IMG/VR virus record: IMGVR_UViG_3300007513_000001
Location: 1-64,000 of that record
Direction: 5' to 3' (one strand)
Length of the DNA stretch: 64,000 nt
The translations under genes were made by a program, and so were the position numbers. Below are positions 1,000 to 58,077 of the stretch, in pieces. Position 1 is the first letter of the stretch. Each line of letters begins with the position of its first letter. The notes below the pieces were generated by a model. That model had not been told where the DNA came from and made no database searches. It was given only the letters and a program-made list of their open reading frames with translations.

Positions 1000-1343
1000 G
1001 TTCAGGTGGCGATTGCTATGAAGCAGCAGGCAAGTTCATAATGGAAGAATGTATGCTTGGGGGTGTGGATGACTGTCAATATATTCTTGTCCATGGTGAA
1101 GTTATGGGTCAAGGTCCCATCGCTGGAATACCGTTTGGACATGCTTGGGTGCTCGATGGTTCGACTGTCATTGACAGATCAAACGGAAGAGACATCTCAA
1201 TGCCAGCGCAGCTTTATTACGCGATCGGGCAGATTGATAGAATCGATAATGTTATTGAGTATCCGTGGGAAGAAGCCCGCACAAAGATATTGGATTACGG
1301 TCATTGGGGCCCGTGGGATCTTGAAACAGAAAGTGGATTATGA
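996..1343 (+). CDS. transglutaminase-like/papain-fold protein
   Basis: GDCYE...GHAWV...VID gives a Cys-His-Asp triad order. Confidence 0.5.
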   Translation: MSSGGDCYEAAGKFIMEECMLGGVDDCQYILVHGEVMGQGPIAGIPFGHAWVLDGSTVIDRSNGRDISMPAQLYYAIGQIDRIDNVIEYPWEEARTKILDYGHWGPWDLETESGL

Positions 1344-1954
1344 AAAAAAAGCCAGAAATCTTTACGCAATTCAACGCGCAGAACGTTCCTGTAAGCGCTG
1401 ACATTCTTGATACGCTAGAACAAGAAGTCGTGAATGAGTCTGCTCTTCGTAAATACATAAGAGAATTATTGATTGAGAAAGACAATTCTGCCGGACCAGG
1501 TGAACGTTATATCTATCGCGGTATGAAGATTGACTTGGGCTCTGCAGGCCTGGCATCTCAAATTAGAAAAGTGGCGCAAAAGAAACCTGCAGGAATATCT
1601 GATCAAGAAGCCGGCCGTTTTATTATGGGGAAACTGCAAAACGAAGAGATTGGTGAGTCTTGGACTACAAGCATGGACGTTGCGGCCAGTTTTGCAGACG
1701 TTTGGGAAGCTACAAATCGAGGCAGCACTCTTCACGTGATGTTTACTGGTAAGATTCCAAATGAGTTTGGTTATGATCCCACAACAACAGGTGAAGAACC
1801 ACCGATGTTCGAAGATGAGAGTGAAGTCCGGATACCGAAAGGTGAAGAAATTTTCATTTCAAATGTTGCAGTTTTTATTGCCGATAAAAAAGGTGGCAAG
1901 AACTGGATGAAATTCAAACCTGTTGCTTTTAGTCTTGGGAGTGTGAAAGCATGA
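1340..1954 (+). CDS. putative R-S-E class ADP-ribosyltransferase with LRKYIRELLIE leader motif
   Basis: YIYRG, GESWTTS and EDESEV motifs in ART order. Confidence 0.65.
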   Translation: MKKKPEIFTQFNAQNVPVSADILDTLEQEVVNESALRKYIRELLIEKDNSAGPGERYIYRGMKIDLGSAGLASQIRKVAQKKPAGISDQEAGRFIMGKLQNEEIGESWTTSMDVAASFADVWEATNRGSTLHVMFTGKIPNEFGYDPTTTGEEPPMFEDESEVRIPKGEEIFISNVAVFIADKKGGKNWMKFKPVAFSLGSVKA

Positions 1955-2493
1955 ACCTGCTCCGTGAATACATAAGAGAGTTGTTATCAGAAAGGTCTAC
2001 ATTTATGAACAAGGGATCTTCTGATTGGTTCCGTGTTGAACTACCCGGTATTGGATATGCTGAAGGAAGCCAACATTTACGCTTCAAAGAGTGTCAATCA
2101 GACGTTGATGCTATCATGAAAACTCCTGAATATTTAGCTGCAGAAAAGAAGCATCAAGAAACAGCGAAGCCAAGCACTGATATCGTTCGTAACGAAGAAA
2201 CAGGCGAGTGGGAAGAAGTCGAAGTCGGACCAGCAGCGTTTAGGCCGAGATTTTATGATGTTGAGAACGCTTGGATCTCCAACCCAGAAAACAGAGGTAA
2301 GGGGCACGGCAAAGAAATCTACAAGGCTTTTATCAATCAAGCTGTTGAATACTCAAAGAGTTACGGCGGCGTTTTCGTTGGCGCTCATCGATGTGTAATG
2401 GGGTCTGGGTCGTCTGAAGATGCCCAGCGTGTTTGGAAATCATTAGGAAGAGAATACACATCTTCTGGCATGGTTATCTTTATAGGGTTATGA
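1951..2493 (+). CDS. GNAT acetyltransferase with MNLLREYIRELLSE leader
   Basis: ENRGKGHGKEIY acetyl-CoA motif; SEDAQRVWKSL. Confidence 0.6.
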   Translation: MNLLREYIRELLSERSTFMNKGSSDWFRVELPGIGYAEGSQHLRFKECQSDVDAIMKTPEYLAAEKKHQETAKPSTDIVRNEETGEWEEVEVGPAAFRPRFYDVENAWISNPENRGKGHGKEIYKAFINQAVEYSKSYGGVFVGAHRCVMGSGSSEDAQRVWKSLGREYTSSGMVIFIGL

Positions 2494-2494
2494 A

Positions 2495-3184
2495 ATGAAC
2501 CTACTCCGCGAATACATAAGAGAGCTTTTGGCAGAAGCAGCAAAGGGCTTATCTGAATTTGAAGAGCGTGGAATGCATATTGCCATAGAAGATTCGGGTG
2601 ATGCATTTGAGATAAAGCTATATGATTTCGATCCGACATACCGCGAGCCGGGGACACCTGACGTGGCAAGCCCAGCTCCCAGTTCTAATTTTCCAGATGG
2701 CGCTCTTGGCATAATTTCAGCTATGAAAGAAGCAAGTACAGACAATGGTCCGTGTTTGGACGGATTTACTATTACGTGGGTAAGTGCAGAAGGCGGCTGG
2801 GGTCCGCTACTTTACGATTTGGCAATGGAGCTAGCTACGTCCAAAGGCTCCGGCTTAACGCCAGATCGAGAAAGTGTTTCATATGAAGCCAACAGGGTAT
2901 GGGATTATTACCTTGCTAATCGCAGCGATGTTGAAATGGTCCAGATGGATGATTTATCGAACCGCCTTACGCCCGGCACAAAAGAAGATAACTGCGCGAT
3001 GACACTAGCATACGAAAGAGGACTTGAGGGCGGAACGTTTTGGGATGAAGACAATCAAGAGACCCCATGGGATCCGTATGGCAAAGACGTGCTGCAACGA
3101 AGTCCTCTCTCGAAGATGGGTGTATGGAAAGGCGCTTCTAATATTGGTGCCATCAAGGCCATGGATAGATGGACAGAAATATGA
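2495..3184 (+). CDS. GNAT-like protein with MNLLREYIRELLAE leader
   Basis: GWGPLLYDLAM...VSYEANRVWDYY parallels the neighbouring GNAT. Confidence 0.45.
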   Translation: MNLLREYIRELLAEAAKGLSEFEERGMHIAIEDSGDAFEIKLYDFDPTYREPGTPDVASPAPSSNFPDGALGIISAMKEASTDNGPCLDGFTITWVSAEGGWGPLLYDLAMELATSKGSGLTPDRESVSYEANRVWDYYLANRSDVEMVQMDDLSNRLTPGTKEDNCAMTLAYERGLEGGTFWDEDNQETPWDPYGKDVLQRSPLSKMGVWKGASNIGAIKAMDRWTEI

Positions 3185-3792
3185 ACCTGCTACGTGAATA
3201 CATAAGAGAGCTAATATCTGAAAAAAGATATGATCCGCCAATAGAACAGGATGTCGTCCATGGATTGAGCTTTGACGAGATGCGAGCTCATCTTTCCAGA
3301 CATTTTGGTAAAGCAAAGATAACCTTAACGAATTCTCCGCTCATGCTAGAACAATCTCACAACCCAGGTCAAGGTTTGAAGCCAGAAGGGATTTGGTATG
3401 CGTGCGGAACTGATTGGTTAGATTTTCTGCAGACAGAAATGGGAGGACCATCCGCTGAAGAATATCAGGTTTGGGCTCTCAAAATTGATATGTCGAAAGT
3501 CAAATCTTTAACAACTTCAAAAGAGATCTCACGATTCTCTTGGAAATATAGAAACACTGATGAATATTTGAAAAACCCTGTAGTTAAAATTGTAGATTGG
3601 TCACTTGCGTCTAAAGAATTTGCTGGCGTAGAGTTTTGCCCCTATCCGGTTGGCGGTATGGATATTTCTGTTAAAAATGTTTGGTACGCCGGTATCGATG
3701 TCCCCTCAGGCTGTGTTTGGAACCCTTCAGCTATTACTAACTCTACTTTAGTAGCTGAGCTTAAAGACGACGGTTGGGAGGTATACGTATGA
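3181..3792 (+). CDS. hypothetical protein with MNLLREYIRELISE leader
   Basis: Leader repeat; Trp-rich body (KPEGIWY, VDW, SGCVWN). Confidence 0.6.
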   Translation: MNLLREYIRELISEKRYDPPIEQDVVHGLSFDEMRAHLSRHFGKAKITLTNSPLMLEQSHNPGQGLKPEGIWYACGTDWLDFLQTEMGGPSAEEYQVWALKIDMSKVKSLTTSKEISRFSWKYRNTDEYLKNPVVKIVDWSLASKEFAGVEFCPYPVGGMDISVKNVWYAGIDVPSGCVWNPSAITNSTLVAELKDDGWEVYV

Positions 3793-4313
3793 AAATTTTA
3801 CGAGAATATATAAGAGAGCTATTGAGTGAAGGTGTTGAGTTTCGCGAAGTTGATTCCCCGCTGAAATACAGTCGCTCTTCAAACGTCAAACGAATTGCGT
3901 ATTGCGATTCTGGTGTGACCGAGCTTCCTGGTAAACATGACACGTATTTTGATGAGATTGAAAGGTGGCGAAAGCGTACGAGTAGAGGTAAACTACTCAA
4001 AAAGCCAAAGCTTGAAGAAATCATCCCAGGCGTTAGCGACGCATGTATTATTGGGTTTTTAGACTACCACGTTCAGGGCCAGACCATAGATGGGAAAAAT
4101 ACCATGTGGTATATCGATTACATGAAAACTCGCACCGACTCTCGGGGCGCTGGCGTTGCTAGCAAGTTGGTTGACAACTTTTATGAAACCGTTGTAAAGC
4201 CGGGTGATCATGTCCATTTTGGTAAAATGATGCATCCGGGAATTGGCCACCTTAAAGATAAGATGGTAAAAAAATACCCGGATGTCAAAACAATCGGAGC
4301 GGTAAATTACTAA
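3789..4313 (+). CDS. GNAT acetyltransferase with MKILREYIRELLSE leader
   Basis: YIDYMKTRTDSRGAGVASKLV motif. Confidence 0.6.
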   Translation: MKILREYIRELLSEGVEFREVDSPLKYSRSSNVKRIAYCDSGVTELPGKHDTYFDEIERWRKRTSRGKLLKKPKLEEIIPGVSDACIIGFLDYHVQGQTIDGKNTMWYIDYMKTRTDSRGAGVASKLVDNFYETVVKPGDHVHFGKMMHPGIGHLKDKMVKKYPDVKTIGAVNY

Positions 4314-8572: not shown

Positions 8573-8592
8573 ATTTGAAATAAAATATAGAT

Positions 8593-43980: not shown

Positions 43981-44143
43981 AGTATTATCGATTTCGCCGA
44001 GGGATAGGGGAGAAAAACTGCCGCGCCGAACATTATGAGAGACATGAGACGGGGAGCGCTGAGTAGTGATAATCGCTCGCTGGGACCAACACATTAACGA
44101 TTCTCTTCTCTATCCCTCGGCCTTTTCTTTAATGGAAACAAAC

Positions 44144-44338: not shown

Positions 44339-44356
44339 AAAAATAATTGTTGATTC

Positions 44357-44386
44357 TGTAAAATTTCACCCTATTTATGGTATAAT
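44357..44386 (+). promoter_or_regulatory. early-type promoter TGTAAA-N18-TATAAT
   Basis: Motif match. Confidence 0.8.
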
Positions 44387-44412
44387 AGTACTATAAGGTA
44401 AGGAGCAGTTCA

Positions 44413-47603: not shown

Positions 47604-47936
47604 GTGAAAGTTACAAAGAGACAATTAAAAAGAATTATTGAACAAGCCACGGCGCTGCAGGAGCCAATGACTCCTAAATACGTTCATAATTCGCTGATGG
47701 GCAAGAGCGTTCTTAGCGGGGTCGCCTTTATGGATATCGCCATGAATGCAATTAGCGCCGGTGATTTTGTGGCGGCTGCTGATGCAGTTATGGATTCGCT
47801 AATGATAGACGACACCGCGCCAGGAGACGAAGAAGAACTAGCTGATTTACTTTCTACAGCCCAAACCGCAGAAGATGTCGCTATGATAGGTGCAGACTGG
47901 GGCACAAGAAAATTTAGAACGCATTTTGCAGGATAA
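47604..47936 (+). CDS. MKITKRQL-leader family protein
   Basis: MKVTKRQLKRIIEQ. Confidence 0.75.
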   Translation: MKVTKRQLKRIIEQATALQEPMTPKYVHNSLMGKSVLSGVAFMDIAMNAISAGDFVAAADAVMDSLMIDDTAPGDEEELADLLSTAQTAEDVAMIGADWGTRKFRTHFAG

Positions 47937-47939
47937 AAA

Positions 47940-48191
47940 ATGAGAGTTACGAAAAGACAACTTCGAAGCATTATTAAAGAGCAAATCCTCCAAGAGAAGA
48001 TGGGCACCGATGTTTATAAAGTCGTCATGCGAACTCTCAGCAAACAAGGTCCGAAGACTCATCAAGAATTATTGGCTACACTACTTAGCGATTACCCAGG
48101 CGCTTCTGATGAAGAATTAGATAGATATATTGACAGCTTTGAAGAGAGTGGTGATATTATTTACGATAGAAGAAGTCAAAAATATAGATAG
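47940..48191 (+). CDS. MKITKRQL-leader family protein (winged-helix-like body)
   Basis: MRVTKRQLRSIIKEQILQE. Confidence 0.75.
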   Translation: MRVTKRQLRSIIKEQILQEKMGTDVYKVVMRTLSKQGPKTHQELLATLLSDYPGASDEELDRYIDSFEESGDIIYDRRSQKYR

Positions 48192-48200
48192 GTAAACAAT

Positions 48201-48437
48201 ATGAAAATCACGAAACGACAGTTAAAGAGAATTATCAAAGAAGAGAAGGCAAAATCGATTAAAGAGTCGAGATATATGAGCTCTCATGAAGAAAAAGCTC
48301 TCCCCAGCCAAAATGCTGACAGCATCCTCCTTGATCTCGAGTCGCTTCTTGACATGAATTATCACATTTTTACAGACGCTGAAAGTAATATACTTGAACA
48401 GGCACTAGAGATCATGAATAAGCTTCGAGGCCAATAA
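48201..48437 (+). CDS. MKITKRQL-leader family protein
   Basis: MKITKRQLKRIIKEE. Confidence 0.75.
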   Translation: MKITKRQLKRIIKEEKAKSIKESRYMSSHEEKALPSQNADSILLDLESLLDMNYHIFTDAESNILEQALEIMNKLRGQ

Positions 48438-48781
48438 TGAAGATCCCAAGACGACAACTTAGAAGAATCATTCGAGAATCAATTGATGATTGGGGCATGG
48501 GTCCGGATGTTGTCGGAAGATCAGGTCGTTCTTACGGCGCTGACTCTAAAGACGACGGCAGTCATTTCAGGGATGTGATTGTCATGAGCCCTAATGGAGA
48601 TTCAGTTTTGGTTGACGGAAAAGAAACCTACATTCAAGATGTCCCAATGCAATTGGAGCTAATGGGTTTTCCAATGAGCGATATAGATGCAGATAATTTA
48701 ATATTCGCACTAGAAGAATCAATGGCCGATGGCTATGTAGAGCTTGAAGTTAAGTATGAAAATGGAGTATGGAGCTGGTAA
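48437..48781 (+). CDS. MKITKRQL-leader family protein
   Basis: MKIPRRQLRRIIRES. Confidence 0.75.
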   Translation: MKIPRRQLRRIIRESIDDWGMGPDVVGRSGRSYGADSKDDGSHFRDVIVMSPNGDSVLVDGKETYIQDVPMQLELMGFPMSDIDADNLIFALEESMADGYVELEVKYENGVWSW

Positions 48782-49104
48782 TGAAAATCACGAAACGACA
48801 ACTTAGAAAGATTATTAAAGAAGAGAAACTCATGCTTATTACTGAGCAGAGCGTTCCGCAAGGGTTAATAGAGAATCTAAATAATGCCATGATTGCTATT
48901 TTAGACCATTTAGAAAACAATGCGGATCAGCGCGTAGATCCTGAAGATATTCCTCTTCAAGCACTAGAGATAATAGAAGAAGAAGTTGCTGGGTTTAAAG
49001 AGTATTTGGGCTCCGGATATGATGCTGGTGGATGGGATGAAGCCGATCAGGATTATGCCGATCAACAGTATGCCGAACAACATGGCAACCCTTGGGATGA
49101 ATAA
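48781..49104 (+). CDS. MKITKRQL-leader family protein
   Basis: MKITKRQLRKIIKEE. Confidence 0.75.
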   Translation: MKITKRQLRKIIKEEKLMLITEQSVPQGLIENLNNAMIAILDHLENNADQRVDPEDIPLQALEIIEEEVAGFKEYLGSGYDAGGWDEADQDYADQQYAEQHGNPWDE

Positions 49105-49105
49105 A

Positions 49106-49897
49106 ATGAAAATTACAAAGAGACAGCTTAGAAGAATTATTCGAGAAGCCGGCCGGACCGAACACGACGCCGAAGCTCGTGGTATGGCGGCTGCATATCG
49201 CCAAGGTTACAATGATGCCTATCGTGGGCCCGGGTTTAAACGCCGCGGCGGCGGCGCTGAGTATCGTAGAGGATACGAAAAGGGAGTTGCTGATGTAGAA
49301 GAAGGTAAGCCCCCACCCGACGACTTTCGCCCAGCACGGCGCATTCGAGAAGCCGAAGGCTCTACCAAGAAATATGACGATGACTCTGCTCTGAAGGGCG
49401 GCCAAAGTAAGTTACCTGATGGACTTCAAAAGGGTATTATTGATAAGACTGTTGAAGACCGAGAGCAGCGCGAAGAAGAAGAGAGAAAAGAGAAGAACGA
49501 ATCTATCAGAATCACAAGAAGTCAGCTTAGAAGAATTATTAAAGAAGAGAAGCAAAAAATGCTTAATGAGTGGGGATCACGTCCTGAAACGGGCCTTCCA
49601 CTAATTGATTTTGCAAATGCTTATGCTGGCCTGGGAGATGCTGTACAATCACAAGTAGATGCTGTTGTTGCAGCCTACGTTAATGGGGGCGGTCCTGATA
49701 GTGAAAACTTTCGAGAGACTGTATATGAACAAAACCCAAACGCCATTGACATGGCAATGGAAAGGATTGGGCGTTTATACCTTGACGATTCAGATGATTA
49801 CCAACAAATCGTTGAAGCATTGGAATATGCTCAAAGTATTTATGAAGAAGGCGATGCAGAAGTTGAAGCTGATGCTATGGCGGCTGGAGATAGATAG
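49106..49897 (+). CDS. MKITKRQL-leader family protein with internal second leader
   Basis: MKITKRQLRRIIREA; internal IRITRSQLRRIIKEE. Confidence 0.75.
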   Translation: MKITKRQLRRIIREAGRTEHDAEARGMAAAYRQGYNDAYRGPGFKRRGGGAEYRRGYEKGVADVEEGKPPPDDFRPARRIREAEGSTKKYDDDSALKGGQSKLPDGLQKGIIDKTVEDREQREEEERKEKNESIRITRSQLRRIIKEEKQKMLNEWGSRPETGLPLIDFANAYAGLGDAVQSQVDAVVAAYVNGGGPDSENFRETVYEQNPNAIDMAMERIGRLYLDDSDDYQQIVEALEYAQSIYEEGDAEVEADAMAAGDR

Positions 49898-50371
49898 ATG
49901 AAAATCACAAGACGCCAACTCTGCAAAATCATTAAAGAAGCAACAAATTTAACGAGTGGGTTGTTTGCTAAGCCCATGGCGTATGGCGGCATGTATGTGG
50001 AGACATCAGATGGGGAACATATTGGTATAGGAGAAATGTTATTACATCTTGTTGACGCTGGTGACACCGCATTTTTTGATACTGATGATGGGCTCGACCC
50101 GGAAAATCTCGAGAAGATCCTGTCTCGAGACAACGAAGGAGTTCAGGGAGGCGCACGAAAGTGGGACTCGGATGTATTCGAGCAGTATTATGGCGTAAAT
50201 CTCGTCAAGCTCGTTAATCGTTATGCTTACAATAAAAAGCTCCGGCCCGTGCATTGGCTCGGCGAAGATGGTGAGATGCCATCAGACGTTGCTTGGCGGG
50301 AACAAAACAACCCTCCAGAGCCTGAGTACGAAGATGATGGCACAAACAAATTTGAGGAACAGTATTCATGA
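49898..50371 (+). CDS. MKITKRQL-leader family protein
   Basis: MKITRRQLCKIIKEA. Confidence 0.75.
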   Translation: MKITRRQLCKIIKEATNLTSGLFAKPMAYGGMYVETSDGEHIGIGEMLLHLVDAGDTAFFDTDDGLDPENLEKILSRDNEGVQGGARKWDSDVFEQYYGVNLVKLVNRYAYNKKLRPVHWLGEDGEMPSDVAWREQNNPPEPEYEDDGTNKFEEQYS

Positions 50372-50655
50372 AAATCACCAAACGTCAGCTTAGAAACATT
50401 ATTACCGAGCTTGGTATCGATCGCATGACGAGTGGTGATAATGATCCGCGTCTTGATGACCCCGATGATATGACCCTTAGCATTGAGCTTTGGGAAAAGA
50501 TTGTTGAGCACCTTCAAGCAATAAATGATATTTTTGATAGTGACGCGGGACGACAACTCATCGTTACCGGTGGAGACGATGCGTTACAAAAAGGCGCAAT
50601 CCAAGATGCATTACCCTGGGCCCAAGACTGGCTTCAGTACATGAAGGAAGAATAA
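50368..50655 (+). CDS. MKITKRQL-leader family protein
   Basis: MKITKRQLRNIITEL. Confidence 0.75.
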   Translation: MKITKRQLRNIITELGIDRMTSGDNDPRLDDPDDMTLSIELWEKIVEHLQAINDIFDSDAGRQLIVTGGDDALQKGAIQDALPWAQDWLQYMKEE

Positions 50656-50656
50656 A

Positions 50657-50977
50657 ATGAAAATCACAAAAAGACAACTTAGAAAAATCATTAAAGAATC
50701 TGTGACAGATACAATTCCCTACGAAGCCGCGGCAGAACAGTCGGCAGCTAAAGTAGCCGATCTTTTCTATAAAGATATGATGGCACTATTCGAAGAGACT
50801 CCCGAAGCTTTCGAGGGTCGTACGAATAGACTGGAGTGGGAAGAACAAGTCGTTTATGCTATACAAGAAATTGAGACCGGCATAACCGCAGCAATCGAAG
50901 AAGTTATACAAAGAATCGAAACTCAACTTCACGACGGTGAATATGATACCGGCGGTGAAACTGGAGCATACGGGTGA
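50657..50977 (+). CDS. MKITKRQL-leader family protein
   Basis: MKITKRQLRKIIKES; ends LHDGEY. Confidence 0.75.
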   Translation: MKITKRQLRKIIKESVTDTIPYEAAAEQSAAKVADLFYKDMMALFEETPEAFEGRTNRLEWEEQVVYAIQEIETGITAAIEEVIQRIETQLHDGEYDTGGETGAYG

Positions 50978-50980
50978 ATT

Positions 50981-51760
50981 ATGAAAATTAATAAAAACAA
51001 ATTAAAGCAAATAATCAAAGAAGTTCGAATGGTACATGCTCGTCCTTCGCCAATGAAATCTAGAGCTAACTCAGAAACTATAGAAGCTATAAAAAATCAG
51101 CGCTTAGTAGAATATGAACAGTATGTCGATGAAGATGGCAATGTCTACGATGACGAGGGCAATGTAAGTCGTCGAGGCCGGAGCTTTGGAAGACAATATG
51201 GTGGTCAAACATACACTGGAACTCGACCTCCATGGAGCGGAAGAAGCAAATATAAGTCTACAAGAAAAACTTCGTATGTTGGCGCTGATTCTAACGCAGA
51301 TCAAATTGCAGCTGTAGAAGCTGCTATAGCTGTTAAGCCAAACAATTTTCTAACTTCTATATTAAAACAACTCAAAAAAGGCCGAGGTTTGAGTGCAAAG
51401 CAAAAATCAATTGTAAAGAAAATTATTGTTAAAAATGACGCAGAAGCAGCAAAGCTTTTCGAAGGTCGTAGAATGAAAATCACCAAACGCCAACTTAGAA
51501 GAATTATTAAAGAAGAGAGGCAGACACTCCTTAAAGAATATTCTGACTATCCTTCGTGGCTAGATTTATCAGACCAAGTAGACGATATTTCGGAGATGTT
51601 AGACATGGCTGCTGACAAGTATGTTACAAGTGCCTGGTTGTTTAGTGGTGAGAACGAAGGAAATGCTATTGCTGATGGTGTAGCCGAAAAATTAGAGCAG
51701 CTTTATAGAGATGCTGAAGCTTTAGGCGGATTGATTCGTGGAAGCGGAGCAATTAAATAA
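50981..51760 (+). CDS. MKITKRQL-leader family fusion of two cassettes
   Basis: MKINKNKLKQIIKEV; in-frame MKITKRQLRRIIKEE at 51473. Confidence 0.75.
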   Translation: MKINKNKLKQIIKEVRMVHARPSPMKSRANSETIEAIKNQRLVEYEQYVDEDGNVYDDEGNVSRRGRSFGRQYGGQTYTGTRPPWSGRSKYKSTRKTSYVGADSNADQIAAVEAAIAVKPNNFLTSILKQLKKGRGLSAKQKSIVKKIIVKNDAEAAKLFEGRRMKITKRQLRRIIKEERQTLLKEYSDYPSWLDLSDQVDDISEMLDMAADKYVTSAWLFSGENEGNAIADGVAEKLEQLYRDAEALGGLIRGSGAIK

Positions 51761-52281
51761 TGAAAATCACAAAAAGACAACTTAAACAGATTATCAAGGA
51801 AGGTATTGATATCTTGAACTCCGAGACCGGCGAGCTTCTGGTATTTGAAGATGACTGGCAGGATGGCAGTGCTGACGCACCAGAGGCTGCTGCTAGAGAC
51901 ATAATGAAGCGCTTGAATATAACCGAGCTTCCATCGAACTGGGGCCGGGAGGATGGGGTTGAGACAATCGAGGTTACTCCCGATGACTGGGCGCTGATAG
52001 ATGTGGAGCTGCGCGGCAAACGACGCTATCGCAAAAATAAGAGAGAGCAGGAACGTTTGGATATTGATAATCTTCTTGCAAGAGCAGACCAGTGGGCAAT
52101 GGATGCTAGTGGTGATTATGGAGCCGACAACCCAGAAGTAGATATGCAAGATATAGCTTGGGATCTTGCTGCAGGCGCCAAGTATGAATTTAGAGAAGAT
52201 GAGTGGGATGAACTTATTTGGCACTTTGATAACAGCGAAGACGAGCTTCTAACTTTTATTGCGGACAGGATTGCAGGATAA
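51760..52281 (+). CDS. MKITKRQL-leader family protein
   Basis: MKITKRQLKQIIKEG. Confidence 0.75.
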   Translation: MKITKRQLKQIIKEGIDILNSETGELLVFEDDWQDGSADAPEAAARDIMKRLNITELPSNWGREDGVETIEVTPDDWALIDVELRGKRRYRKNKREQERLDIDNLLARADQWAMDASGDYGADNPEVDMQDIAWDLAAGAKYEFREDEWDELIWHFDNSEDELLTFIADRIAG

Positions 52282-52385
52282 CAATGAAATATTTAGATTT
52301 AATATTAGAAGACTTGGAATATGCTCTTGTAGTAGAACTCGAAGACTTATATGATATTTGGTCATGGCATCCAGGGATGGGATAA

Positions 52386-52715
52386 ATGAGAATCACAAAG
52401 AGACAGCTTAGAAGAATCGTTCATGAAGCCATGGTGACCAAAGGGACACCATATTCCAGAAATCCGAGTTTTAAACTCCCTTATCGAGGAACTGGATATG
52501 GCGGGCGAAGAATAATCTCTCGAGATAGAGCGTGGCTTGAATTTGTCCCTCGGGGGTCAGATCCCCTAACGCCAGAAGACATGTTTAGATCAGTGACACT
52601 TTTAGAAATCGATGATCCAGAAATTTTAAAAGCTCTCCAGTCAGGCGCACCAAAATCGATGGGGCCACTAGACAGCTATGATGTTTATAGCGTATACGCA
52701 ACTACTGCGGGGTAA
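52386..52715 (+). CDS. MKITKRQL-leader family protein
   Basis: MRITKRQLRRIVHEA. Confidence 0.75.
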   Translation: MRITKRQLRRIVHEAMVTKGTPYSRNPSFKLPYRGTGYGGRRIISRDRAWLEFVPRGSDPLTPEDMFRSVTLLEIDDPEILKALQSGAPKSMGPLDSYDVYSVYATTAG

Positions 52716-52717
52716 AA

Positions 52718-53074
52718 ATGAGAATCACAAGACGACAGCTTAAAAGAATTATCAAGGAATATGGAAGCGGCTATTCAAGTAATAGTCCACCCTCAAAACA
52801 ATCTAACTGGCGCGGGTTTGCAGATGCGTTGGATATCGGTGTACTCGATCTAGATGAAATTGCTTACGACTTAGGGTTTCAAGATTTCAGAGATATGGAT
52901 GCCAGTATAACCCCTGATCGTTTATCTAAGCGTGACCCGGGCTCATTCCTTGCCGCTGTTCGTAATTTTGCATTGTCCGTCGATGGACTAGATGACCGCG
53001 AGATTCTGCAGGTTGCAGGAACGCCATCCGATCTTTTAGATCGTGACTCACTTGTTAGAAGAACCACTTATTAG
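52718..53074 (+). CDS. MKITKRQL-leader family protein
   Basis: MRITRRQLKRIIKEY. Confidence 0.75.
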   Translation: MRITRRQLKRIIKEYGSGYSSNSPPSKQSNWRGFADALDIGVLDLDEIAYDLGFQDFRDMDASITPDRLSKRDPGSFLAAVRNFALSVDGLDDREILQVAGTPSDLLDRDSLVRRTTY

Positions 53075-53083
53075 GATATTCTC

Positions 53084-53602
53084 GTGAAAATAACTAAAAA
53101 ACAAATAAAAAGAATCATAAGAGAATTTTATTCAGTTGATGTTGAAAATTATCTTCGCGCTAACGCAGCAGAATATCATAAAGATCCTTCACTAGATTTT
53201 GCATCTATAAAAATGCTTTTAATGGACGATTTCATGGACAATGTTGGATACAGCGAAGATCCTTCTCAATATGAACAACTTATTAATCAACTTGCAGCTG
53301 GAGAAGATATTAGAGAATCTCTTTTAAAAGAAACACCTGTCGGCGCTTTTGAGAATTGGGAAGCTATAAGAGATTCCATCGCACACCAGCTCTGGGAACT
53401 TGGTACAATATCTGGAATGGAGTTAGTTTCTGCAGTTCAAGGAGGGTATAATTGGGCTTCACCCCCAGCACAAAATGACATATTTTCTGTATTAGACCAA
53501 ATGCTAGAAGAAGATGAAGTTGATTTTGATGTAGAAGAAGACGAATGGAGCCTAAGTGATCGTGGCAATTACTATGATTACATGAAAGGATTTAAGTCAT
53601 GA
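53084..53602 (+). CDS. MKITKRQL-leader family protein
   Basis: MKITKKQIKRIIREF; internal IRESLLKE. Confidence 0.75.
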   Translation: MKITKKQIKRIIREFYSVDVENYLRANAAEYHKDPSLDFASIKMLLMDDFMDNVGYSEDPSQYEQLINQLAAGEDIRESLLKETPVGAFENWEAIRDSIAHQLWELGTISGMELVSAVQGGYNWASPPAQNDIFSVLDQMLEEDEVDFDVEEDEWSLSDRGNYYDYMKGFKS

Positions 53603-54252
53603 AAATTACAAAATGCCAGCTTAGAAATATTATTAGAGAATCTCTTCTTACCGAAGGCGAAATGCAAGATATTATCGTCAACTCGTACGAAGATGTAGAG
53701 ATATACAACATTCTTGCAAATTATGCTCTCGTCAATGATATTCAAGGCGCGCTTGCCGACCCTGAAATAAAACCTTATGTTGAAAAGAATGAAGTGGGGT
53801 GGATATCTGATGAAGCCGGTGGGTGGTTCGAAAACGTTGGAGAGTACGATGAGATGCCGGCACCAGAAGGTTGGGACAGCCAAAAGGCGTACAAGTTCTT
53901 AAGAGATCTGGAGGATGCAGCTTGGAAAGTATACAACAAGCAGGCGAAGGCAGCCATTGCTGGTGATCCAGACAAGGAGTTCTTGGAATTCTTAGGTAAC
54001 GAGTGGACTAGCATGATCGAACCCAATGACTTGTCAGACATCAAGTGGAAAGAGTACAAAAAGTACATTCGACTTAAGCCGCCCCGTTCTATATCTCATG
54101 GTGTTGGAGAGATCAATGTTTCAAAAGAAAATATTAATGCTCTATATCCAGGTGCTTACGATGACTTTATAGACTTTTTAACTACACGTACAGGTGGACA
54201 GCTCGGAAGGCGCAAGCCATACAAGAGATCACCGGCGCCATACTACGATTGA
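53599..54252 (+). CDS. MKITKRQL-leader family protein
   Basis: MKITKCQLRNIIRESLLTE. Confidence 0.75.
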   Translation: MKITKCQLRNIIRESLLTEGEMQDIIVNSYEDVEIYNILANYALVNDIQGALADPEIKPYVEKNEVGWISDEAGGWFENVGEYDEMPAPEGWDSQKAYKFLRDLEDAAWKVYNKQAKAAIAGDPDKEFLEFLGNEWTSMIEPNDLSDIKWKEYKKYIRLKPPRSISHGVGEINVSKENINALYPGAYDDFIDFLTTRTGGQLGRRKPYKRSPAPYYD

Positions 54253-54259
54253 GATACAG

Positions 54260-54709
54260 ATGAAAATTACTAAAAGACAGCTTCGAGGAATCGTCAGAAA
54301 AACCTTATTAGAAAATGCTACAGCTGATGAGCTTCGAAAAATTGAACTGCTTTGGTGGAGTGATGAAGCTGGAGGGTATTCTAACAGAGATCAAGCCAGG
54401 ATGATTATCAACACCCTGGGTGTCAACCCTAGACTTTTAAAGATTTGGACTATAATACTTCCTTGGGGAGAGATTTATGAGCCATGGACATTTTACGGTG
54501 GACCAGAAGAGGGTGAAGCTGGATTTAGAGTAGATGATGTCAACAGAATTCTTGACTACTTTAATTCTGAAAACGAGATTCAATTAACTGCTACATTTCA
54601 CAACAAGACAGGTCATGTAGAGTTAGATACTCCATCCCATTTAGACCAGGGCACCAGCTATGATATTTCTGATGGGATAGAAAAAGCCGCTTTTGAGACT
54701 GCAGAATAA
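54260..54709 (+). CDS. MKITKRQL-leader family protein
   Basis: MKITKRQLRGIVRKTLLE. Confidence 0.75.
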   Translation: MKITKRQLRGIVRKTLLENATADELRKIELLWWSDEAGGYSNRDQARMIINTLGVNPRLLKIWTIILPWGEIYEPWTFYGGPEEGEAGFRVDDVNRILDYFNSENEIQLTATFHNKTGHVELDTPSHLDQGTSYDISDGIEKAAFETAE

Positions 54710-54950
54710 AGCCGTCAGAAGCTACTCGATATATTCTTTATTTTAATTGATGAGACTTACATTTATAATAGCGGAGAACAACGAAAGACATTCTGTTAAA
54801 CTATAAGGATATTCTGTGGATAGTTCCGCTAAAAAAGTATATTTATAAAAACGATATCTAGAATATCGCATTGTTCTAAATCGGTGTTCAATTTAAACTA
54901 AAAAAATAATAACGATAAAGAGACTTGATATATAGTCTCAGAGGTGTTAA

Positions 54951-55409
54951 ATGAAACTTTCTAAAAGACAATTAAGAAAATTAATTAAAGAAGCTTGCGG
55001 CGATGTTGTCGACGCAGCTACAGAGCCAGTTGCTTTAGATTTAGCCCTAGAGCCAACTCCAGCCGTAGTAGAATCTACAGCTCCAGAACAAGACTTAATG
55101 GTCGAGATGGAAGTCGCGCAAAGAGCGCTAGAGCAAGTTGTAGAATCTGTTCAAAATGCTGCTCACTTGTGCCATGATTGTGTTCCTGAAGTCGCAGCTC
55201 AAGCGCCGCTAATGGAAGCAATGGTTGCACAAGCTGTAGCGCTTCAAGAAACTCTTGAGGCACAGACACTAGTTGTTGCAGAGTCTGCTGAAGATACCCC
55301 TCTTTTGGACGCTGTTGGAGATGCTGCTGAAATTGTGGCAGATGCAATGGAAGAGACTCCAAGGAGAGCTGGCGTTACGCTTGGGTTCAACGGTCCAGGG
55401 TTTATGTAA
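54951..55409 (+). CDS. MKITKRQL-leader family protein
   Basis: MKLSKRQLRKLIKEA; very acidic, CHDC. Confidence 0.75.
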   Translation: MKLSKRQLRKLIKEACGDVVDAATEPVALDLALEPTPAVVESTAPEQDLMVEMEVAQRALEQVVESVQNAAHLCHDCVPEVAAQAPLMEAMVAQAVALQETLEAQTLVVAESAEDTPLLDAVGDAAEIVADAMEETPRRAGVTLGFNGPGFM

Positions 55410-55413
55410 AACA

Positions 55414-55629
55414 ATGAAAATTTCAAAGAGACAGCTTAAAAGAATTATTAGAGAAGAGAAAGCTCGCTTAAGCGAACTTGGTATTGACCGTCAGTCTGGT
55501 CAAGAACTGTATGCTGATCTAACCGACGCGCAACAGTTGGCATTAATTAATTTGCGGCGTGCAGTAGACGAATGTGTTGCCGTCGGAGTTTCTGAGGCTG
55601 ATATGATAGACACATTTAAATCGAGGTAG
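55414..55629 (+). CDS. MKITKRQL-leader family protein
   Basis: MKISKRQLKRIIREE. Confidence 0.75.
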   Translation: MKISKRQLKRIIREEKARLSELGIDRQSGQELYADLTDAQQLALINLRRAVDECVAVGVSEADMIDTFKSR

Positions 55630-55633
55630 TGTT

Positions 55634-56239
55634 GTGAAAATCACAAAAAGACAATTAAGAAGAATTATTAGAGAAGAATCACACGAGTTTGGCGGTGGAG
55701 CTCACGAATATAAGCGGGATGATGGTCACCGCACGGGAGATGTAGCTGGCCACTATAAAGATTATGAGGGCGACTGGGGCGGTGATGCAGGCGATGATTC
55801 AAAAACAGACCCTGGCCATAAAGATTATGACGATGTACACCACAAAGCAAAAGCCGCAGTTGCAGCGATTCAAGACCTGGCCGCATCGGCTGGAGTAAGC
55901 ATGGATATGGATGTTGACGGTAAAGATTTAGATCCCGCAGCTTCTGATGGCGACCTAGCGCTGGCTTTAGAACGACGCATTCGCACTCGTAGACTCGCAC
56001 GAAAGATGATTAGAGAAGAAAAGAGAAAGCTTAGAAGAAGACTCTATGAAGACAGCATAGATGATGAATTAGATAATCTTCATAAAAACATTGGAAATGA
56101 TATCGATCACATCAAAGATCTTAAAGATGATATCAAAGATGAAAAAGAAGAAGAGCACAGGGCTGAATTAGAAAAAGAACGCAAAGATGAATCGTTAAGA
56201 CGTTTTATTAGAAAAGAAGTAAAACGCATTAGAGGATAA
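55634..56239 (+). CDS. MKITKRQL-leader family protein with internal leader-like motifs
   Basis: MKITKRQLRRIIREE; LARKMIREE; LRRFIRKE. Confidence 0.75.
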   Translation: MKITKRQLRRIIREESHEFGGGAHEYKRDDGHRTGDVAGHYKDYEGDWGGDAGDDSKTDPGHKDYDDVHHKAKAAVAAIQDLAASAGVSMDMDVDGKDLDPAASDGDLALALERRIRTRRLARKMIREEKRKLRRRLYEDSIDDELDNLHKNIGNDIDHIKDLKDDIKDEKEEEHRAELEKERKDESLRRFIRKEVKRIRG

Positions 56240-56240
56240 T

Positions 56241-56582
56241 ATGTTCACCCAAAAAGACTTAGTTCGCATTATTCGTGAAGAGCTTGAAGCTGATCGTAAG
56301 ACTATTCCATCTGGTGAAATAGATGAAGAGGGCCCAGGATCGATTGAAGATGTCGAAGCGAGAGAAAATGTTTGGTCTGGCGGGGATAATCTTTCTATTG
56401 ATGTAGATCAGTCTGAAGCTTCCGGATCTGAGCCGACCACTAAAGAACCAGAAACTATGAAAATTTCTGAGGGTTTAAATAAAGTAGTAAAACAGCTAGA
56501 AATAGCCCAGAGAAAAGGAATCCCACCACAGCCAACGACTCTATTAGAGCTTTATAGACTGCAGGATAAGTTGAAAAAATGA
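56241..56582 (+). CDS. MKITKRQL-leader family protein (divergent leader)
   Basis: MFTQKDLVRIIREE. Confidence 0.7.
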   Translation: MFTQKDLVRIIREELEADRKTIPSGEIDEEGPGSIEDVEARENVWSGGDNLSIDVDQSEASGSEPTTKEPETMKISEGLNKVVKQLEIAQRKGIPPQPTTLLELYRLQDKLKK

Positions 56583-56953
56583 AAATCACAAGAAAACAAC
56601 TGAGAAGAATTATTCGAGAAAGTAAAATCTTGAAAGAGCAGCCCATATCGGGAGAACAAGCTGCTGAAATGCAGGCAGCGCAAGAGAGACATTGGCCAAG
56701 GGTGGAATGGAACGATGCTGCTGATTTAGCAGATAAATGGGCTGACATGGAAGAAAAGTCTTTTGATAAAGGTGACCCTTCGATGACAAAAAACGGAGAG
56801 TTGACAGCCGCTGAAGCTAAAGAGTGGTGGAATTCTCAAGTAGAAAACGCCATGATAGACATGGAGGCTGCGTTAACAGATAGAGTTCGTAAAATAGCTT
56901 TAGAAACTATGCAAGAATATAGCTTGATGTTAGATAATGGAGATTTTGCGTAA
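56579..56953 (+). CDS. MKITKRQL-leader family protein
   Basis: MKITRKQLRRIIRES; ends LDNGDF. Confidence 0.75.
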   Translation: MKITRKQLRRIIRESKILKEQPISGEQAAEMQAAQERHWPRVEWNDAADLADKWADMEEKSFDKGDPSMTKNGELTAAEAKEWWNSQVENAMIDMEAALTDRVRKIALETMQEYSLMLDNGDFA

Positions 56954-56990
56954 AGTTTAAAATTCATATTCTTGTATTATAATTGCAATT

Positions 56991-57491
56991 ATGAAGATTT
57001 TTACTGAAAAATTATCCCGTAAAAGCTACTATATGGGTCCAATTGAAATCAAAACCAGCACTATTGAAGGTGCTGGTTTTGGTGTTTTTGCTAAAGAAAA
57101 AATAAAAAAACGCCAACTTATTGAAAGGTGTCCGGTAATACTATTTGATAGATGGATTTTTCAGCTTTATGAACAAAGTAGAGAACACGGCCATATTTTA
57201 AGTGAATATATTTTTAGATGGCCCGGTGGAAGAAATGTAGCTTTGGCAATGGGGTATGGCGGAATGTTTAATCATTCCGAAGAGGCCAACGCTAAATGGA
57301 CATACACTGTAACAGAAGGAAAATTAGTTAAGGACGGCATATCAGAACTCGGGCCGTTTAACTGCTTGAATTTTTATACAAGAAAAGATATTGAAGCTGG
57401 CGAAGAATTATTCATAGATTATGGCATAAAAAGTGAGTTCGGCTTAAACGATAATATTAATCATGATTCTATAAGAAGAACTATATTTTAG
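56991..57491 (+). CDS. SET-domain protein (lysine methyltransferase-like)
   Basis: GAGFGVFA; MFNHS; GEELFIDYG. Confidence 0.85.
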   Translation: MKIFTEKLSRKSYYMGPIEIKTSTIEGAGFGVFAKEKIKKRQLIERCPVILFDRWIFQLYEQSREHGHILSEYIFRWPGGRNVALAMGYGGMFNHSEEANAKWTYTVTEGKLVKDGISELGPFNCLNFYTRKDIEAGEELFIDYGIKSEFGLNDNINHDSIRRTIF

Positions 57492-57536
57492 CATGTTGAG
57501 CCGCTGTATACTTAGTTACGGTACAGCGGTGAAAAT

Positions 57537-57761
57537 ATGTCTCTCAACAAAGCCCTTCAAGTGGGCGATTTAGTGTATGTGAAAAGTCAAGAAAATAGTG
57601 CTATAGCACCACTTTTACCTAATAAAGAAGGTGGATTTGGAATTGTAGTTAATATTAAACCGACTAGAATTTTTCCGTCTGAAAAGAAATCAGAGCTATA
57701 TGGAATTTTTATTAAAGGAAAAATTCAAGACTTACTAAGCGAAAGTATAAATAAAGTTTAA
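57537..57761 (+). CDS. SH3/KOW-like miniprotein (MKVGDLV family)
   Basis: LQVGDLVYV...GIVV. Confidence 0.6.
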   Translation: MSLNKALQVGDLVYVKSQENSAIAPLLPNKEGGFGIVVNIKPTRIFPSEKKSELYGIFIKGKIQDLLSESINKV

Positions 57762-57803
57762 CATAGATATTTAATAAAGAAGAACCACACGGAGTTTTAT
57801 TCT

Positions 57804-58076
57804 ATGCTTATCAAAAAGAAAAAATTAAAGAAAATAATTCGAGAATCAATGCAGTTTATAAAAGAATCTCATGAAGCTCCGTGCCCTATAGCCACCGCAA
57901 ACCAATTACATGCGGCTGGGTATAGCCAAGAAGAAGTAAATCAGTTTGTTAATTCTCTATTAAATCAATATCAATCTAATAAACAAAAAGATTTTGAACC
58001 AACCAGAAGTAAAGGTTATGTTTCTAGTCCCAACAGGGGCGGAATTATTGGCGGACTCGGGTTTGGGGGATTTTAA
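57804..58076 (+). CDS. MKITKRQL-leader family protein (divergent leader)
   Basis: MLIKKKKLKKIIRES...IKES. Confidence 0.7.
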   Translation: MLIKKKKLKKIIRESMQFIKESHEAPCPIATANQLHAAGYSQEEVNQFVNSLLNQYQSNKQKDFEPTRSKGYVSSPNRGGIIGGLGFGGF

Positions 58077-58077
58077 A

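What the first reader, a model, noticed from the sequence alone, without database searches (positions are those of the whole stretch)
49106..56239. Leader motif recurs inside ORFs: cassette fusions or protease-processed polyproteins
Seen: 50981-51760 has a complete in-frame MKITKRQLRRIIKEE at 51473. 49106-49897 has IRITRSQLRRIIKEE. 55634-56239 has LARKMIREE and LRRFIRKE. The first ORF (1-999) has RVREYVRALLKE and 1340-1954 has LRKYIRELLIE. Inference: adjacent cassettes fused by stop-codon loss, and internal copies may be cleavage sites that release separate cargo domains, or internal starts (GAAGG precedes 51473).
Basis: partly seen in the sequence, partly recalled or inferred. Interest (0 to 1): 0.62.

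Follow-up and report, generated by a model that had tools for sequence, protein, structure and literature searches.

The report
Leader-tagged cargo cassettes, some fused
An uncultured 293-kb marine jumbo phage carries about 30 small genes that share only a 14-residue leader, MKITKRQLRRII[KR]E. Where the leader recurs inside an ORF it marks a junction between fused modules, and it is probably a T4-style capsid-targeting propeptide ending in a prohead-protease cut site.

Summary
The window is the first 64 kb of a circularly assembled 293,409-bp marine phage with a T4-type head. Between 47604 and 58076, 22 tandem genes start with the leader MKITKRQLRRII[KR]E; their cargos are unrelated and mostly acidic. 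Strong in-frame internal copies lie at 49505 (ATC, not a start codon) and 51473 (ATG). Decayed copies that keep only the tail lie at 49337, 53306 and 55994, and more weakly at 56195. The motifs in 1-999 and 1340-1954 belong to a second leader family, MNLLREYIRELLxE.

Fusion of modules is shown by comparison: the same modules occur alone, fused, or fused to other partners in related phages, and breakpoints fall at the end of the leader. Independent marine contigs reproduce both junctions. A leader profile finds 7,521 protein clusters; the 150 best listed each match in 2-3 places, and 142 checked carry 2-3 copies.

Cleavage is inferred, not shown. The leader ends in [ILV]-x-E, the T4 gp21 motif. 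The genome encodes an S77 prohead protease. A head-module protein has a leader-like N-terminus, and decayed junctions keep only the x-E tail. Internal initiation is possible at 51473 only. This looks like an expanded, combinatorial variant of T4 internal-protein cassettes.

The parts
47604..49104 (+). Five single-module leader genes: 47604-47936 (GTG start, degenerate leader VKVTKRQLKRIIEQ), 47940-48191, 48201-48437, 48437-48781, 48781-49104.
   Evidence: Leader weight-matrix scores of 23-47 bits. Gene starts and codons. Cargos are unrelated by blastp.
49106..49897 (+). Three-module ORF of 263 aa. It consists of the leader plus module a; a decayed junction RRIRE|AEGSTKKY (49337-49351) plus module b; and a full internal leader IRITRSQLRRIIKE (49505-49546, first codon ATC) plus module c.
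   Evidence: Module b stands alone behind a full leader in P0057, P0390 and P0367. Module c stands alone in L012, L042 and L020. L019 has the same a+b+leader but different later modules. Contigs X2 record 3 and X3 record 12 bridge the junction unchanged.
49898..50977 (+). Three single-module leader genes: 49898-50371, 50368-50655, 50657-50977.
50981..51760 (+). Two-module ORF of 259 aa. It has a degenerate leader MKINKNKLKQIIKE plus a basic N-module ending ..AAKLFEGRR, then a perfect internal leader MKITKRQLRRIIKE (51473-51514, ATG) plus an acidic helical C-module.
   Evidence: In the AF2 model both leaders are helices and pTM is 0.38, meaning no fixed orientation between the modules. Contigs from two studies bridge the junction.
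51760..53074 (+). Three single-module leader genes: 51760-52281, 52386-52715, 52718-53074.
   Evidence: Orthologues of 51760 are found in L025, L012, L009, L042 and L043.
53084..53602 (+). Leader gene (GTG start) with a cryptic junction, DIRESLLKE, at 53306-53332.
   Evidence: The two halves match different genes elsewhere: residues 2-82 match L030 and L022, and residues 75-155 match L029 and L042. The 25-nt stretch 53308-53332 repeats the leader end at 53631-53655 (family D13).
53599..55629 (+). Four leader genes: 53599-54252 (stand-alone here, fused behind a decayed leader in L012), 54260-54709, 54951-55409, 55414-55629.
55634..56239 (+). Leader gene (GTG start, 201 aa) with internal tail-only motifs LARKMIREE (55994-56020) and LRRFIRKE (56195-56218).
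   Evidence: The 201-aa orthologues in L012 and L042 keep LRRIVRE and IRRMVKE at the first site.
56241..58076 (+). Last members of the array: 56241-56582 (degenerate leader MFTQKDLVRIIREE), 56579-56953, and 57804-58076 (degenerate leader MLIKKKKLKKIIRE). The SET-domain gene 56991-57491 lies between them and is not a member.
1..4313 (+). Second leader family, MNLLREYIRELL[SA]E. ORF 1-999 is the C-terminal part of a protein of about 515 aa with three modules that starts at genome position 292823; its internal copy RVREYVRALLKE lies at 190-225. ORF 1340-1954 has a 33-aa pre-sequence, then the leader at 1442-1477, then an ADP-ribosyltransferase fold. ORFs 1951-2493, 2495-3184, 3181-3792 and 3789-4313 carry the leader at the N-terminus.

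Best explanation
**What it is.** The region is an array of cargo cassettes. Each module is a small, usually very acidic protein headed by a basic, amphipathic 14-residue leader, M-K-I-T-K-R-Q-L-R-R-I-I-[KR]-E. Leaders delimit the modules. Among related marine jumbo phages the modules are exchanged, split and fused at leader boundaries. A leader inside an ORF is therefore the junction of a multi-module protein.

**What is shown.**
- Leader conservation acts on the peptide, not on the DNA.
- Modules are shuffled between genomes.
- Split and fused forms of the same modules exist.
- The start codon decays at internal copies.
- Old junctions retain only the leader tail.

**What is inferred.**
- The leader works like the T4 capsid-targeting sequence. 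Its N-terminal half docks the protein onto the acidic scaffolding core of the prohead.
- Its end, [ILV]-x-E, is cut by the phage's gp21-type (S77) prohead protease.
- Multi-module ORFs would then be polyproteins, cut at each retained [ILV]-x-E junction into separate cargos that stay in the head and enter the host with the DNA.
- The 42-nt leader-coding repeat would also supply the homology for cassette exchange.
For: **The leader family**
- There are 32 strong copies in the genome against none in shuffled controls. Cargos are unrelated.
- Synonymous codons vary. Pairwise identity is 0.79 at codon positions 1+2 and 0.60 at position 3.
- Conservation drops sharply after E14, and E14 is invariant in 71 sequences.
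- A leader profile finds 7,521 clusters. Each of the 150 best listed matches in 2-3 stretches, and 142 checked carry 2-3 copies with a median spacing of 120 aa.

**Split, fused and swapped forms**
- G000 and L019 share the N-module plus the internal leader, then diverge straight after E14.

**Decay pattern at internal copies**
- The Met codon is a non-start codon in 13 of 22 internal copies, against 4 of 245 first copies.
- Old junctions keep only the tail abutting the next module: RRIRE|AEGSTKKY, MRE|ADGSTKKY, GIIRE|GN, SLIKE|QWGSE and LLSE|KDD.
- [ILVM][ILV]xE lies within 25 aa after the LFE module in 45 of 71 proteins, against 5.3% of background windows.

**Link to the head**
- An S77 prohead protease lies at 171474-172085 (84.7 bits; phrog_207).
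- There is a T4 gp23-type capsid protein (E 4e-29). It has [ILV]-x-E sites at LLE52 and LRE61, flanking the position (about residue 56) that aligns with the mature T4 N-terminus.
- A 143-aa head-module protein starts MAKISKSMLKGIVKE. It scores 14.9 bits here and up to 25.9 bits in relatives, and is present in 6 of 9 genomes.
- S77 is present in 8 of 9 large leader-bearing contigs.

**Literature**
- gp21 cuts after L/I-X-E. The 10-19-residue propeptides of the internal proteins (IPs) target them to the core, with targeting in the N-terminal part and processing at residues 8 and 10 (PMC9026906).
- T-even IPs share only the targeting sequence (PMC3012670).

**The sister leader family**
- Its leader, MNLLREYIRE.., resembles the T4 sequence MKTYQEFIAE.
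- It heads an ADP-ribosyltransferase fold with invariant R60, S107, E160 and E162 and VIA-align Z 7.5. This parallels T4 Alt, a packaged ADP-ribosyltransferase cut by gp21 (PMC5694885).
Against: - There is no proteomic or biochemical evidence that any of these proteins is in a virion or is cut.
- The protease-substrate co-fold gave no verdict.
- The leaders show no significant sequence homology to the T4 targeting sequence.
- Co-occurrence with S77 is not independent evidence, because the carriers are one phage lineage.
- Some fused junctions carry no leader or x-E motif, for example ..GIEQYAEGR|VLKEYSDYPSW. Those proteins would stay uncut.
- In the AF2 model the predicted cut site lies inside a continuous helix (169-187) that runs into the cargo.
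- The cargo is strongly acidic (median pI 4.35), unlike the basic T4 IPs.
- In the non-redundant top list, 101 of 153 internal copies keep Met. That list is biased towards Met, but it leaves internal starts possible.
Confidence: 0.5

Rival explanations
1. The leader is a general docking helix, and multi-module proteins act uncut. Its basic amphipathic face would bind a common partner, such as a host factor, nucleic acid or a phage hub protein, and has nothing to do with the capsid or with proteolysis.
For: Both leaders are predicted helices, and the internal one continues into the cargo. The leader has a net charge of +5 on acidic cargo. Some junctions lack any x-E motif. No family or fold points to a head role for the cargos.
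Against: This does not explain why decayed junctions lose the N-terminal half of the helix but keep [ILV]-x-E directly against the next module. It also does not explain why conservation stops exactly at E14, or why a head-module protein next to the protease shares the motif.
Confidence: 0.25
2. Internal leaders are internal translation starts. The long ORF and a nested short product are both made, so no protease is needed to obtain separate cargos.
For: 51473 is an ATG with AAGG 7 nt upstream, like the 4-6-nt Shine-Dalgarno matches of other array genes. In the non-redundant multi-copy set, 101 of 153 internal copies keep Met and 18 have Val. Co-occurring strains carry the same module behind a stop codon and GAGGA (loose ends at 51472).
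Against: 49505 is ATC with no Shine-Dalgarno match. 13 of 22 internal copies in the fetched loci have ATA, ATC, GTA, ACG, ACT, CAA or AAA. Tail-only junctions have no start at all. This can therefore add to another mechanism at some sites but cannot explain the class.
Confidence: 0.15
3. The repeat is conserved mainly as DNA or RNA, as a recombination site or a translation-initiation region. The peptide would be incidental.
For: The 39-57-nt repeats are 60-87% identical at every gene start. Breakpoints between genomes fall at the leader end. Metagenome contigs break at the leaders (joints and loose ends).
Against: Leu, Arg, Thr and Gln use several synonymous codons, and third positions are less conserved than first and second positions. 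Internal copies and tails are kept in frame as peptide in distant relatives. Recombination at the leader is compatible with a peptide function and is part of the main explanation.
Confidence: 0.07
4. The fused ORFs are assembly or sequencing artefacts.
For: The leader is a repeat at which assemblers can mis-join, and contigs do break there.
Against: Contigs from other samples, and for 51473 from a second study, cross both junctions with 0 differences and no indels. Fused orthologues exist in separate assemblies.
Confidence: 0.03

Closest known systems
T4 internal proteins IPI, IPII and IPIII (and Alt) with the capsid-targeting sequence, processed by prohead protease gp21
   Same: A short N-terminal propeptide is the only conserved part of otherwise unrelated small proteins. 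It ends in [IL]-x-E. The genome has a gp21-type S77 protease and a gp23-type capsid. The gene set is hypervariable between relatives. One member of the sister leader family has an ADP-ribosyltransferase fold, like Alt.
   Different: - The leader is 14 residues and strongly basic (MKITKRQLRRIIKE), against the 10-residue, slightly acidic MKTYQEFIAE, and shows no detectable homology to it.
- There are about 30 copies per genome rather than 3.
- The cargos are acidic rather than basic.
- Two leader classes are present.
- Multi-module ORFs with internal leaders are frequent; I know of no description of these for T4 IPs.
- Packaging and cleavage are not demonstrated here.
Propeptide-bearing ejection and inner-body proteins of phiKZ, 201phi2-1 and SPN3US, cut by gp175/gp245
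   Same: These are jumbo phages that load many proteins into the head. A gp21-related protease cuts after Glu in a three-residue motif, often at several sites per propeptide. Paralogues share identical N-terminal peptides (PMC5694885; PMC9026906).
   Different: Their motif is S/A/G-x-E and their propeptides are often longer than 100 residues. They have no tandem array of leader cassettes. This phage has a T4-type head module and is not a phiKZ relative by its helicase and terminase matches.
Modular shuffling of small genes in T4-type phages (hyperplastic regions, PeSL cassettes). Cited from my own knowledge of Arbiol et al. 2010 and Repoila et al. 1994, not read here.
   Same: Short conserved sequences at gene boundaries act as recombination points that swap unrelated small ORFs between related phages.
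   Different: Here the repeat is the coding leader itself, not a promoter-stem-loop. Neither sigma-70-like promoters nor the T4 late-promoter motif is enriched. Recombination also produces in-frame fusions.
Viral polyproteins and polymorphic-toxin cassette arrays
   Same: Independent modules are strung in one ORF with short recognisable linkers. Alternative modules are stored as tandem cassettes.
   Different: No protease domain lies in the ORFs. Most cassettes here have their own starts and are probably all expressed. The modules are very small (median spacing 120 aa).

Membership tests
T4-type capsid-targeting-sequence (CTS) head proteins | A short N-terminal propeptide (10-19 aa) shared by otherwise unrelated proteins | tested here: met
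   A 14-residue leader heads 22 genes in the window. Cargos are unrelated by blastp, and conservation collapses after residue 14.
T4-type capsid-targeting-sequence (CTS) head proteins | The propeptide ends in the gp21 cleavage motif L/I-x-E | tested here: met
   Positions 12-14 are I-[KR]-E, and E14 is invariant in 71 sequences. The motif definition comes from PMC9026906. This was tested on sequence only.
T4-type capsid-targeting-sequence (CTS) head proteins | The genome encodes a gp21-family prohead protease and a T4-type head | tested here: met
   PF03420 at 84.7 bits and phrog_207. The portal, large terminase subunit, a scaffold-like protein and two gp23-like capsid proteins are present.
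T4-type capsid-targeting-sequence (CTS) head proteins | Sequence homology to the T4 CTS (MKTYQEFIAE) | tested here: not met
   T4 ipII, ipIII and ipI were read from NC_000866. Leader 1 shows no significant similarity. Leader 2 (MNLLREYIRE) shares only the pattern xxxxxE[FY]IxE, which is too short to test.
T4-type capsid-targeting-sequence (CTS) head proteins | The proteins are incorporated into proheads and the propeptide is removed | not testable with these tools
   There is no cultured relative in GenBank phages and no RNA or proteome data. The co-fold gave no verdict.
Protease-processed polyprotein | One ORF holds modules that exist as separate genes elsewhere | tested here: met
Protease-processed polyprotein | A protease recognition motif at every module junction | tested here: inconclusive
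   A motif is present at the six junctions mapped in the window and at 45 of 71 junctions after the LFE module, against a 5.3% background. It is absent at some junctions.
Nested gene with internal translation start | A start codon with a ribosome-binding site at the internal copy | tested here: inconclusive
   Met at 51473 (ATG, with AAGG at a typical distance). Not met at 49505 (ATC), nor at 13 of 22 internal copies in related loci.
R-S-E ADP-ribosyltransferases (for ORF 1340-1954 only) | An ADP-ribosyltransferase fold with Arg, Ser and Glu-x-Glu catalytic signatures | tested here: met
   The AF2 model has pLDDT 76.9. The top 40 VIA-align rows are ADP-ribosyltransferases (Z 7.5 to 3.4, residues 53-202). 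R60, S107, E160 and E162 are invariant in 33 homologues. Pfam gave no hit, and activity was not tested.

The most novel reading that the evidence does not exclude
About a tenth of the genes of a cosmopolitan marine jumbo-phage lineage would form a combinatorial payload system. One 14-residue peptide would serve three roles at once: the address label for loading into the prohead, the cut site for the prohead protease, and (as DNA) the recombination site that swaps, splits and concatenates modules. The phage would then inject a rapidly re-assortable set of mostly acidic, possibly DNA-mimicking or enzyme effectors, some delivered as polyproteins.
Probability: 0.35. Interest if true: 0.8.

Novelty: new variant of a known kind. 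Interest (0 to 1): 0.62.

Why it matters
If the leader is a capsid-targeting and cleavage signal, it gives a simple sequence handle on the injected proteome of uncultured ocean phages. The handle already marks 7,521 protein clusters. It would show that T4's three internal proteins are the small end of a much larger strategy, with dozens of interchangeable payload modules per genome and polyprotein forms.

It would also offer a compact natural tag for loading foreign proteins into large capsids.

Even if cleavage proves wrong, the data document an unusually clear case of in-frame domain shuffling mediated by a short coding repeat.

Tried and rejected
- **Family scans.** Pfam and PHROGs scans of 30 leader proteins, and of 10 long relatives, gave nothing usable.
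- **Cultured relatives.** Megablast and tblastn against GenBank phages found none carrying the leader.
- **Syntenic loci.** Using the neighbouring SET protein as query gave only distant matches.
- **Literature.** A search for the motif string found no paper, and a jumbo-phage comparative review does not mention it.
- **Co-fold.** The co-fold of the S77 protease with the 51473 junction peptide gave no verdict. It is evidence neither for nor against.
- **Timing of expression.** The T4 late-promoter motif TATAAATA is not enriched (8 per strand against about 24 expected). Sigma-70-like sites are below the shuffled expectation in the array (17 against 27.9). I could therefore not assign early or late expression.
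- **RNA evidence.** No RNA run holds the region, so expression and transcript ends could not be examined.
- **ADP-ribosyltransferase idea for 1340-1954.** Pfam did not support it; only the fold and the invariant residues do.
- **Signal peptide.** Rejected on inspection, because the leader is charged rather than hydrophobic.

Full report
**Source.** The window is bases 1-64000 of an IMG/VR virus record of 293,409 bp. Its first 38 nt recur at the end, so it is a circular assembly. It has four tRNAs, and almost all genes are on one strand. Its helicase is only 31-36% identical to those of jumbo myophages such as Tunturi_5, XacN1, RsoM2USA and phage G. Near-identical DNA occurs in marine and seawater metagenomes of at least two studies. 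Outside the window the genome has a T4-type head module:
- the large terminase subunit and the portal;
- a Peptidase_S77 (gp21-type) prohead protease at 171474-172085 (84.7 bits, phrog_207);
- several small proteins and a very acidic scaffold-like protein;
- two gp23-type capsid proteins (E 4e-29 to T4 gp23 chains).

**The observation.** Twenty-two consecutive + strand genes between 47604 and 58076 begin with MKITKRQLRRII[KR]E or a degenerate form. Ten more copies lie at 267-268 kb and 284.5-286.5 kb. I built a weight matrix only from other contigs. It gives 32 hits above 17 bits in the genome, and none above 8 bits in reversed or shuffled ORFs. After residue 14 the proteins are unrelated and match no Pfam or PHROG family.
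- Contigs from other samples cross both junctions without a single difference, and for 51473 one comes from a second study. The fused frames are therefore not assembly errors.
- LARKMIREE and LRRFIRKE in 55634-56239 are weak by matrix score. However, their DNA is 80-85% identical to the leader tail, and the first is conserved in two 201-aa orthologues as LRRIVRE and IRRMVKE.

**A second leader.**
- Read across the circular junction, ORF 1-999 is the end of a protein of about 515 aa that starts with this leader at 292823. Its RVREYVRALLKE sits at an internal module junction.
- Most homologues of the 1340-1954 domain are 172-aa proteins that start directly with the leader. The 33-residue pre-sequence seen here recurs in front of the leader with five other cargos. 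Longer relatives keep an internal ..LREYIRELLTE|KDNSAGPG, or a decayed ..GLLSE|KDD, at the junction.
- That domain folds as an ADP-ribosyltransferase. The AF2 model has pLDDT 76.9, and the top 40 structural matches are all such enzymes (Z 7.5 down to 3.4). R60, S107, E160 and E162 are invariant.

**The peptide, not just the DNA, is conserved.** Leu, Arg, Thr and Gln positions use several synonymous codons. Pairwise identity is 0.79 at codon positions 1+2 and 0.60 at position 3. Conservation ends abruptly at E14, which is invariant in 71 aligned leaders.

**Fusion and shuffling are demonstrated.** A DNA pattern for the leader finds 25 stretches in IMG/VR contigs, most carrying arrays. One relative of 289 kb has about 38 copies in 17 kb, in a different order.
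- The C-module of 50981-51760 is a free-standing gene of about 95 aa in L042, L043, L044 and dozens of metagenomic proteins. Elsewhere it is fused behind other modules, with or without a leader.
- Its N-module, which ends ..AAKLFE, occurs in 106 protein clusters. It is followed by a stop, by a full leader (Met, Ile, Val or Ala at position 1) plus varied cargo, by a leader tail only (GIIRE|GN, LVLE|GN, SLIKE|QWGSE), or by a Zeta-toxin/AAA_33 domain. The in-frame arrangement in the window is thus an old, recurrent architecture and not a recent stop-codon loss. L012 carries a deletion derivative of the same junction.
- ORF 49106-49897 proves to have three modules. Module b (GSTKKYDDDSALKG..) is a stand-alone gene behind a full leader in six protein clusters. 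Here it abuts RRIRE|AEG, and in L042 it abuts MRE|ADG.
- Module c of 49106-49897 stands alone in L012, L042 and L020.
- L019 shares modules a and b and the internal leader at 86% identity, then continues with two different modules. The breakpoint falls straight after E14.
- Gene 53599 is free here but fused behind a decayed leader in L012. Gene 53084 has a cryptic junction at DIRESLLKE.
- A profile of the leader finds 7,521 clusters (50% identity) among 1.84 billion proteins, 222 of them at E below 1e-10. All 150 listed match in 2-3 stretches. Of these, the 142 checked carry 2-3 copies with a median spacing of 120 aa.

**What the internal copies do.**
- In the fetched loci, 13 of 22 internal copies have replaced the start codon with ATA, ATC, GTA, ACG, ACT, CAA or AAA, against 4 of 245 first copies. 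Residues 2-14 stay nearly as conserved (mean score 37.9 against 41.2). These copies cannot be starts and are still kept.
- In older junctions the N-terminal half of the leader is lost and only [ILV]-x-E remains, directly against the next module.
- After the LFE module, [ILVM][ILV]xE lies within 25 residues in 45 of 71 proteins, against 5.3% of control windows. The proteins are related, so the p-value overstates independence, but the downstream cargos differ.

This pattern is what a protease site requires, and it matches T4 biology:
- gp21 cuts after L/I-X-E;
- the 10-19-residue propeptides of the internal proteins target them to the core through their N-terminal part and are processed at residues 8 and 10;
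- the T-even internal proteins share nothing but this sequence (PMC9026906; PMC3012670).

Further links to the head:
- A 143-aa protein two genes after the protease begins MAKISKSMLKGIVKE|CLVE|ILAE. It scores 14.9 bits here and 25.9 bits in a relative, and is present in 6 of 9 genomes.
- The capsid protein has [ILV]-x-E sites at LLE52 and LRE61, on either side of the position (about residue 56) that aligns with the mature N-terminus of T4 gp23.
- The protease occurs in 8 of 9 large leader-bearing contigs. The exception is 32% complete.
- T4 IPII and IPIII begin MKTYQEFIAE|A, which leader 2 (MNLLREYIRE) resembles in length and pattern.
- Leader 2 heading an ADP-ribosyltransferase recalls T4 Alt, a packaged enzyme trimmed by gp21 (PMC5694885).

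**Cautions.**
- Nothing here shows packaging or cleavage.
- The carriers form one lineage, so co-occurrence with the protease is weak evidence.
- Some fused junctions have no motif.
- The AF2 model of 50981-51760 (pLDDT 77, pTM 0.38) shows both leaders as helices, and the internal one (169-187) runs on into the cargo bundle.
- The cargos are unusually acidic: median pI 4.35, against 5.8 for other ORFs. The leader is +5, the reverse of T4. This could fit docking on the acidic scaffold and DNA-mimic-type effectors, but that is speculation.
- In the non-redundant top list, 101 of 153 internal copies keep Met. That list is biased towards Met.
- 51473 has an AAGG placed as in other array genes. Co-occurring strains carry the same module behind a stop codon and GAGGA. 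Internal initiation at 51473 cannot be excluded.

**Verdict.** The fusion reading is supported by comparative data. The protease-processing reading is the best available mechanism (about 0.5) but is inferred. The internal-start reading applies at most to 51473. The system works like an enlarged, combinatorial version of the T4 internal-protein cassettes. Membership in that family fails on sequence homology and cannot be tested on the defining biochemical feature. I found no description of this leader in the searched literature.

Noticed in passing
window 1340-1954: Predicted ADP-ribosyltransferase (R-S-ExE type) behind a 33-aa pre-sequence and the second leader. Most homologues are 172 aa and start directly at the leader.
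   Followed up: yes
window 1-999 joined to genome 292823-293371: The record is a circular assembly with a 38-nt overlap. The first ORF of the window is the tail of a protein of about 515 aa with three modules that starts with leader 2 at the other end of the record.
   Followed up: yes
window 3789-4313: This leader-2 protein has sub-threshold GNAT acetyltransferase matches (E 0.002-0.006). Together with the ADP-ribosyltransferase, this hints at host-modifying enzymes in the family.
   Followed up: partly
window 47604-58076 and genome 284505-286543: Cargo modules are strongly acidic (median pI 4.35, 24 of 30 below 6), while other ORFs have a median of 5.8. The leader itself has a net charge of +5.
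   Followed up: partly
proteins P0183, P0211, P0221 (relatives, not in the window): The N-module of 50981 is fused, through EVRALVRE|ALLSE, to a Zeta_toxin/AAA_33 kinase-like domain in some relatives.
   Followed up: no
window 56991-57491: A SET-domain protein (PF00856, E 1.4e-15) sits inside the end of the array. A 15-bp-stem hairpin lies within it at 57048-57083.
   Followed up: no
window 58244-58324: Seven tandem copies of a 9-nt unit (AAGAAGTCG) lie at the 3' end of ORF 57994-58320 and encode an acidic repeat.
   Followed up: no
window 42615-45831: An AAA_5 (MoxR/CobS-like) ATPase at 42615-43694 is followed by a DUF2201 metallopeptidase/VWA protein at 44413-45831. The region has a higher GC content (about 0.51) than the rest of the window.
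   Followed up: no
window 4313-9859: Auxiliary metabolic genes (a PALP enzyme at 4313-5182 and an IMPDH/GMP-reductase at 6273-7325) and four tRNAs (Leu, Lys, Thr, Pro at 7607-9859).
   Followed up: no
genome 176269-178167 and 178261 onwards (L033): Two adjacent gp23-like capsid genes have identical first 120 residues, presumably the capsid and vertex paralogues.
   Followed up: partly
L017 (IMGVR_UViG_GVMAG-S-1030632-100_000001, 8 kb): A contig binned as a giant-virus MAG carries a perfect leader gene. It is probably a mis-binned fragment of this phage lineage.
   Followed up: no
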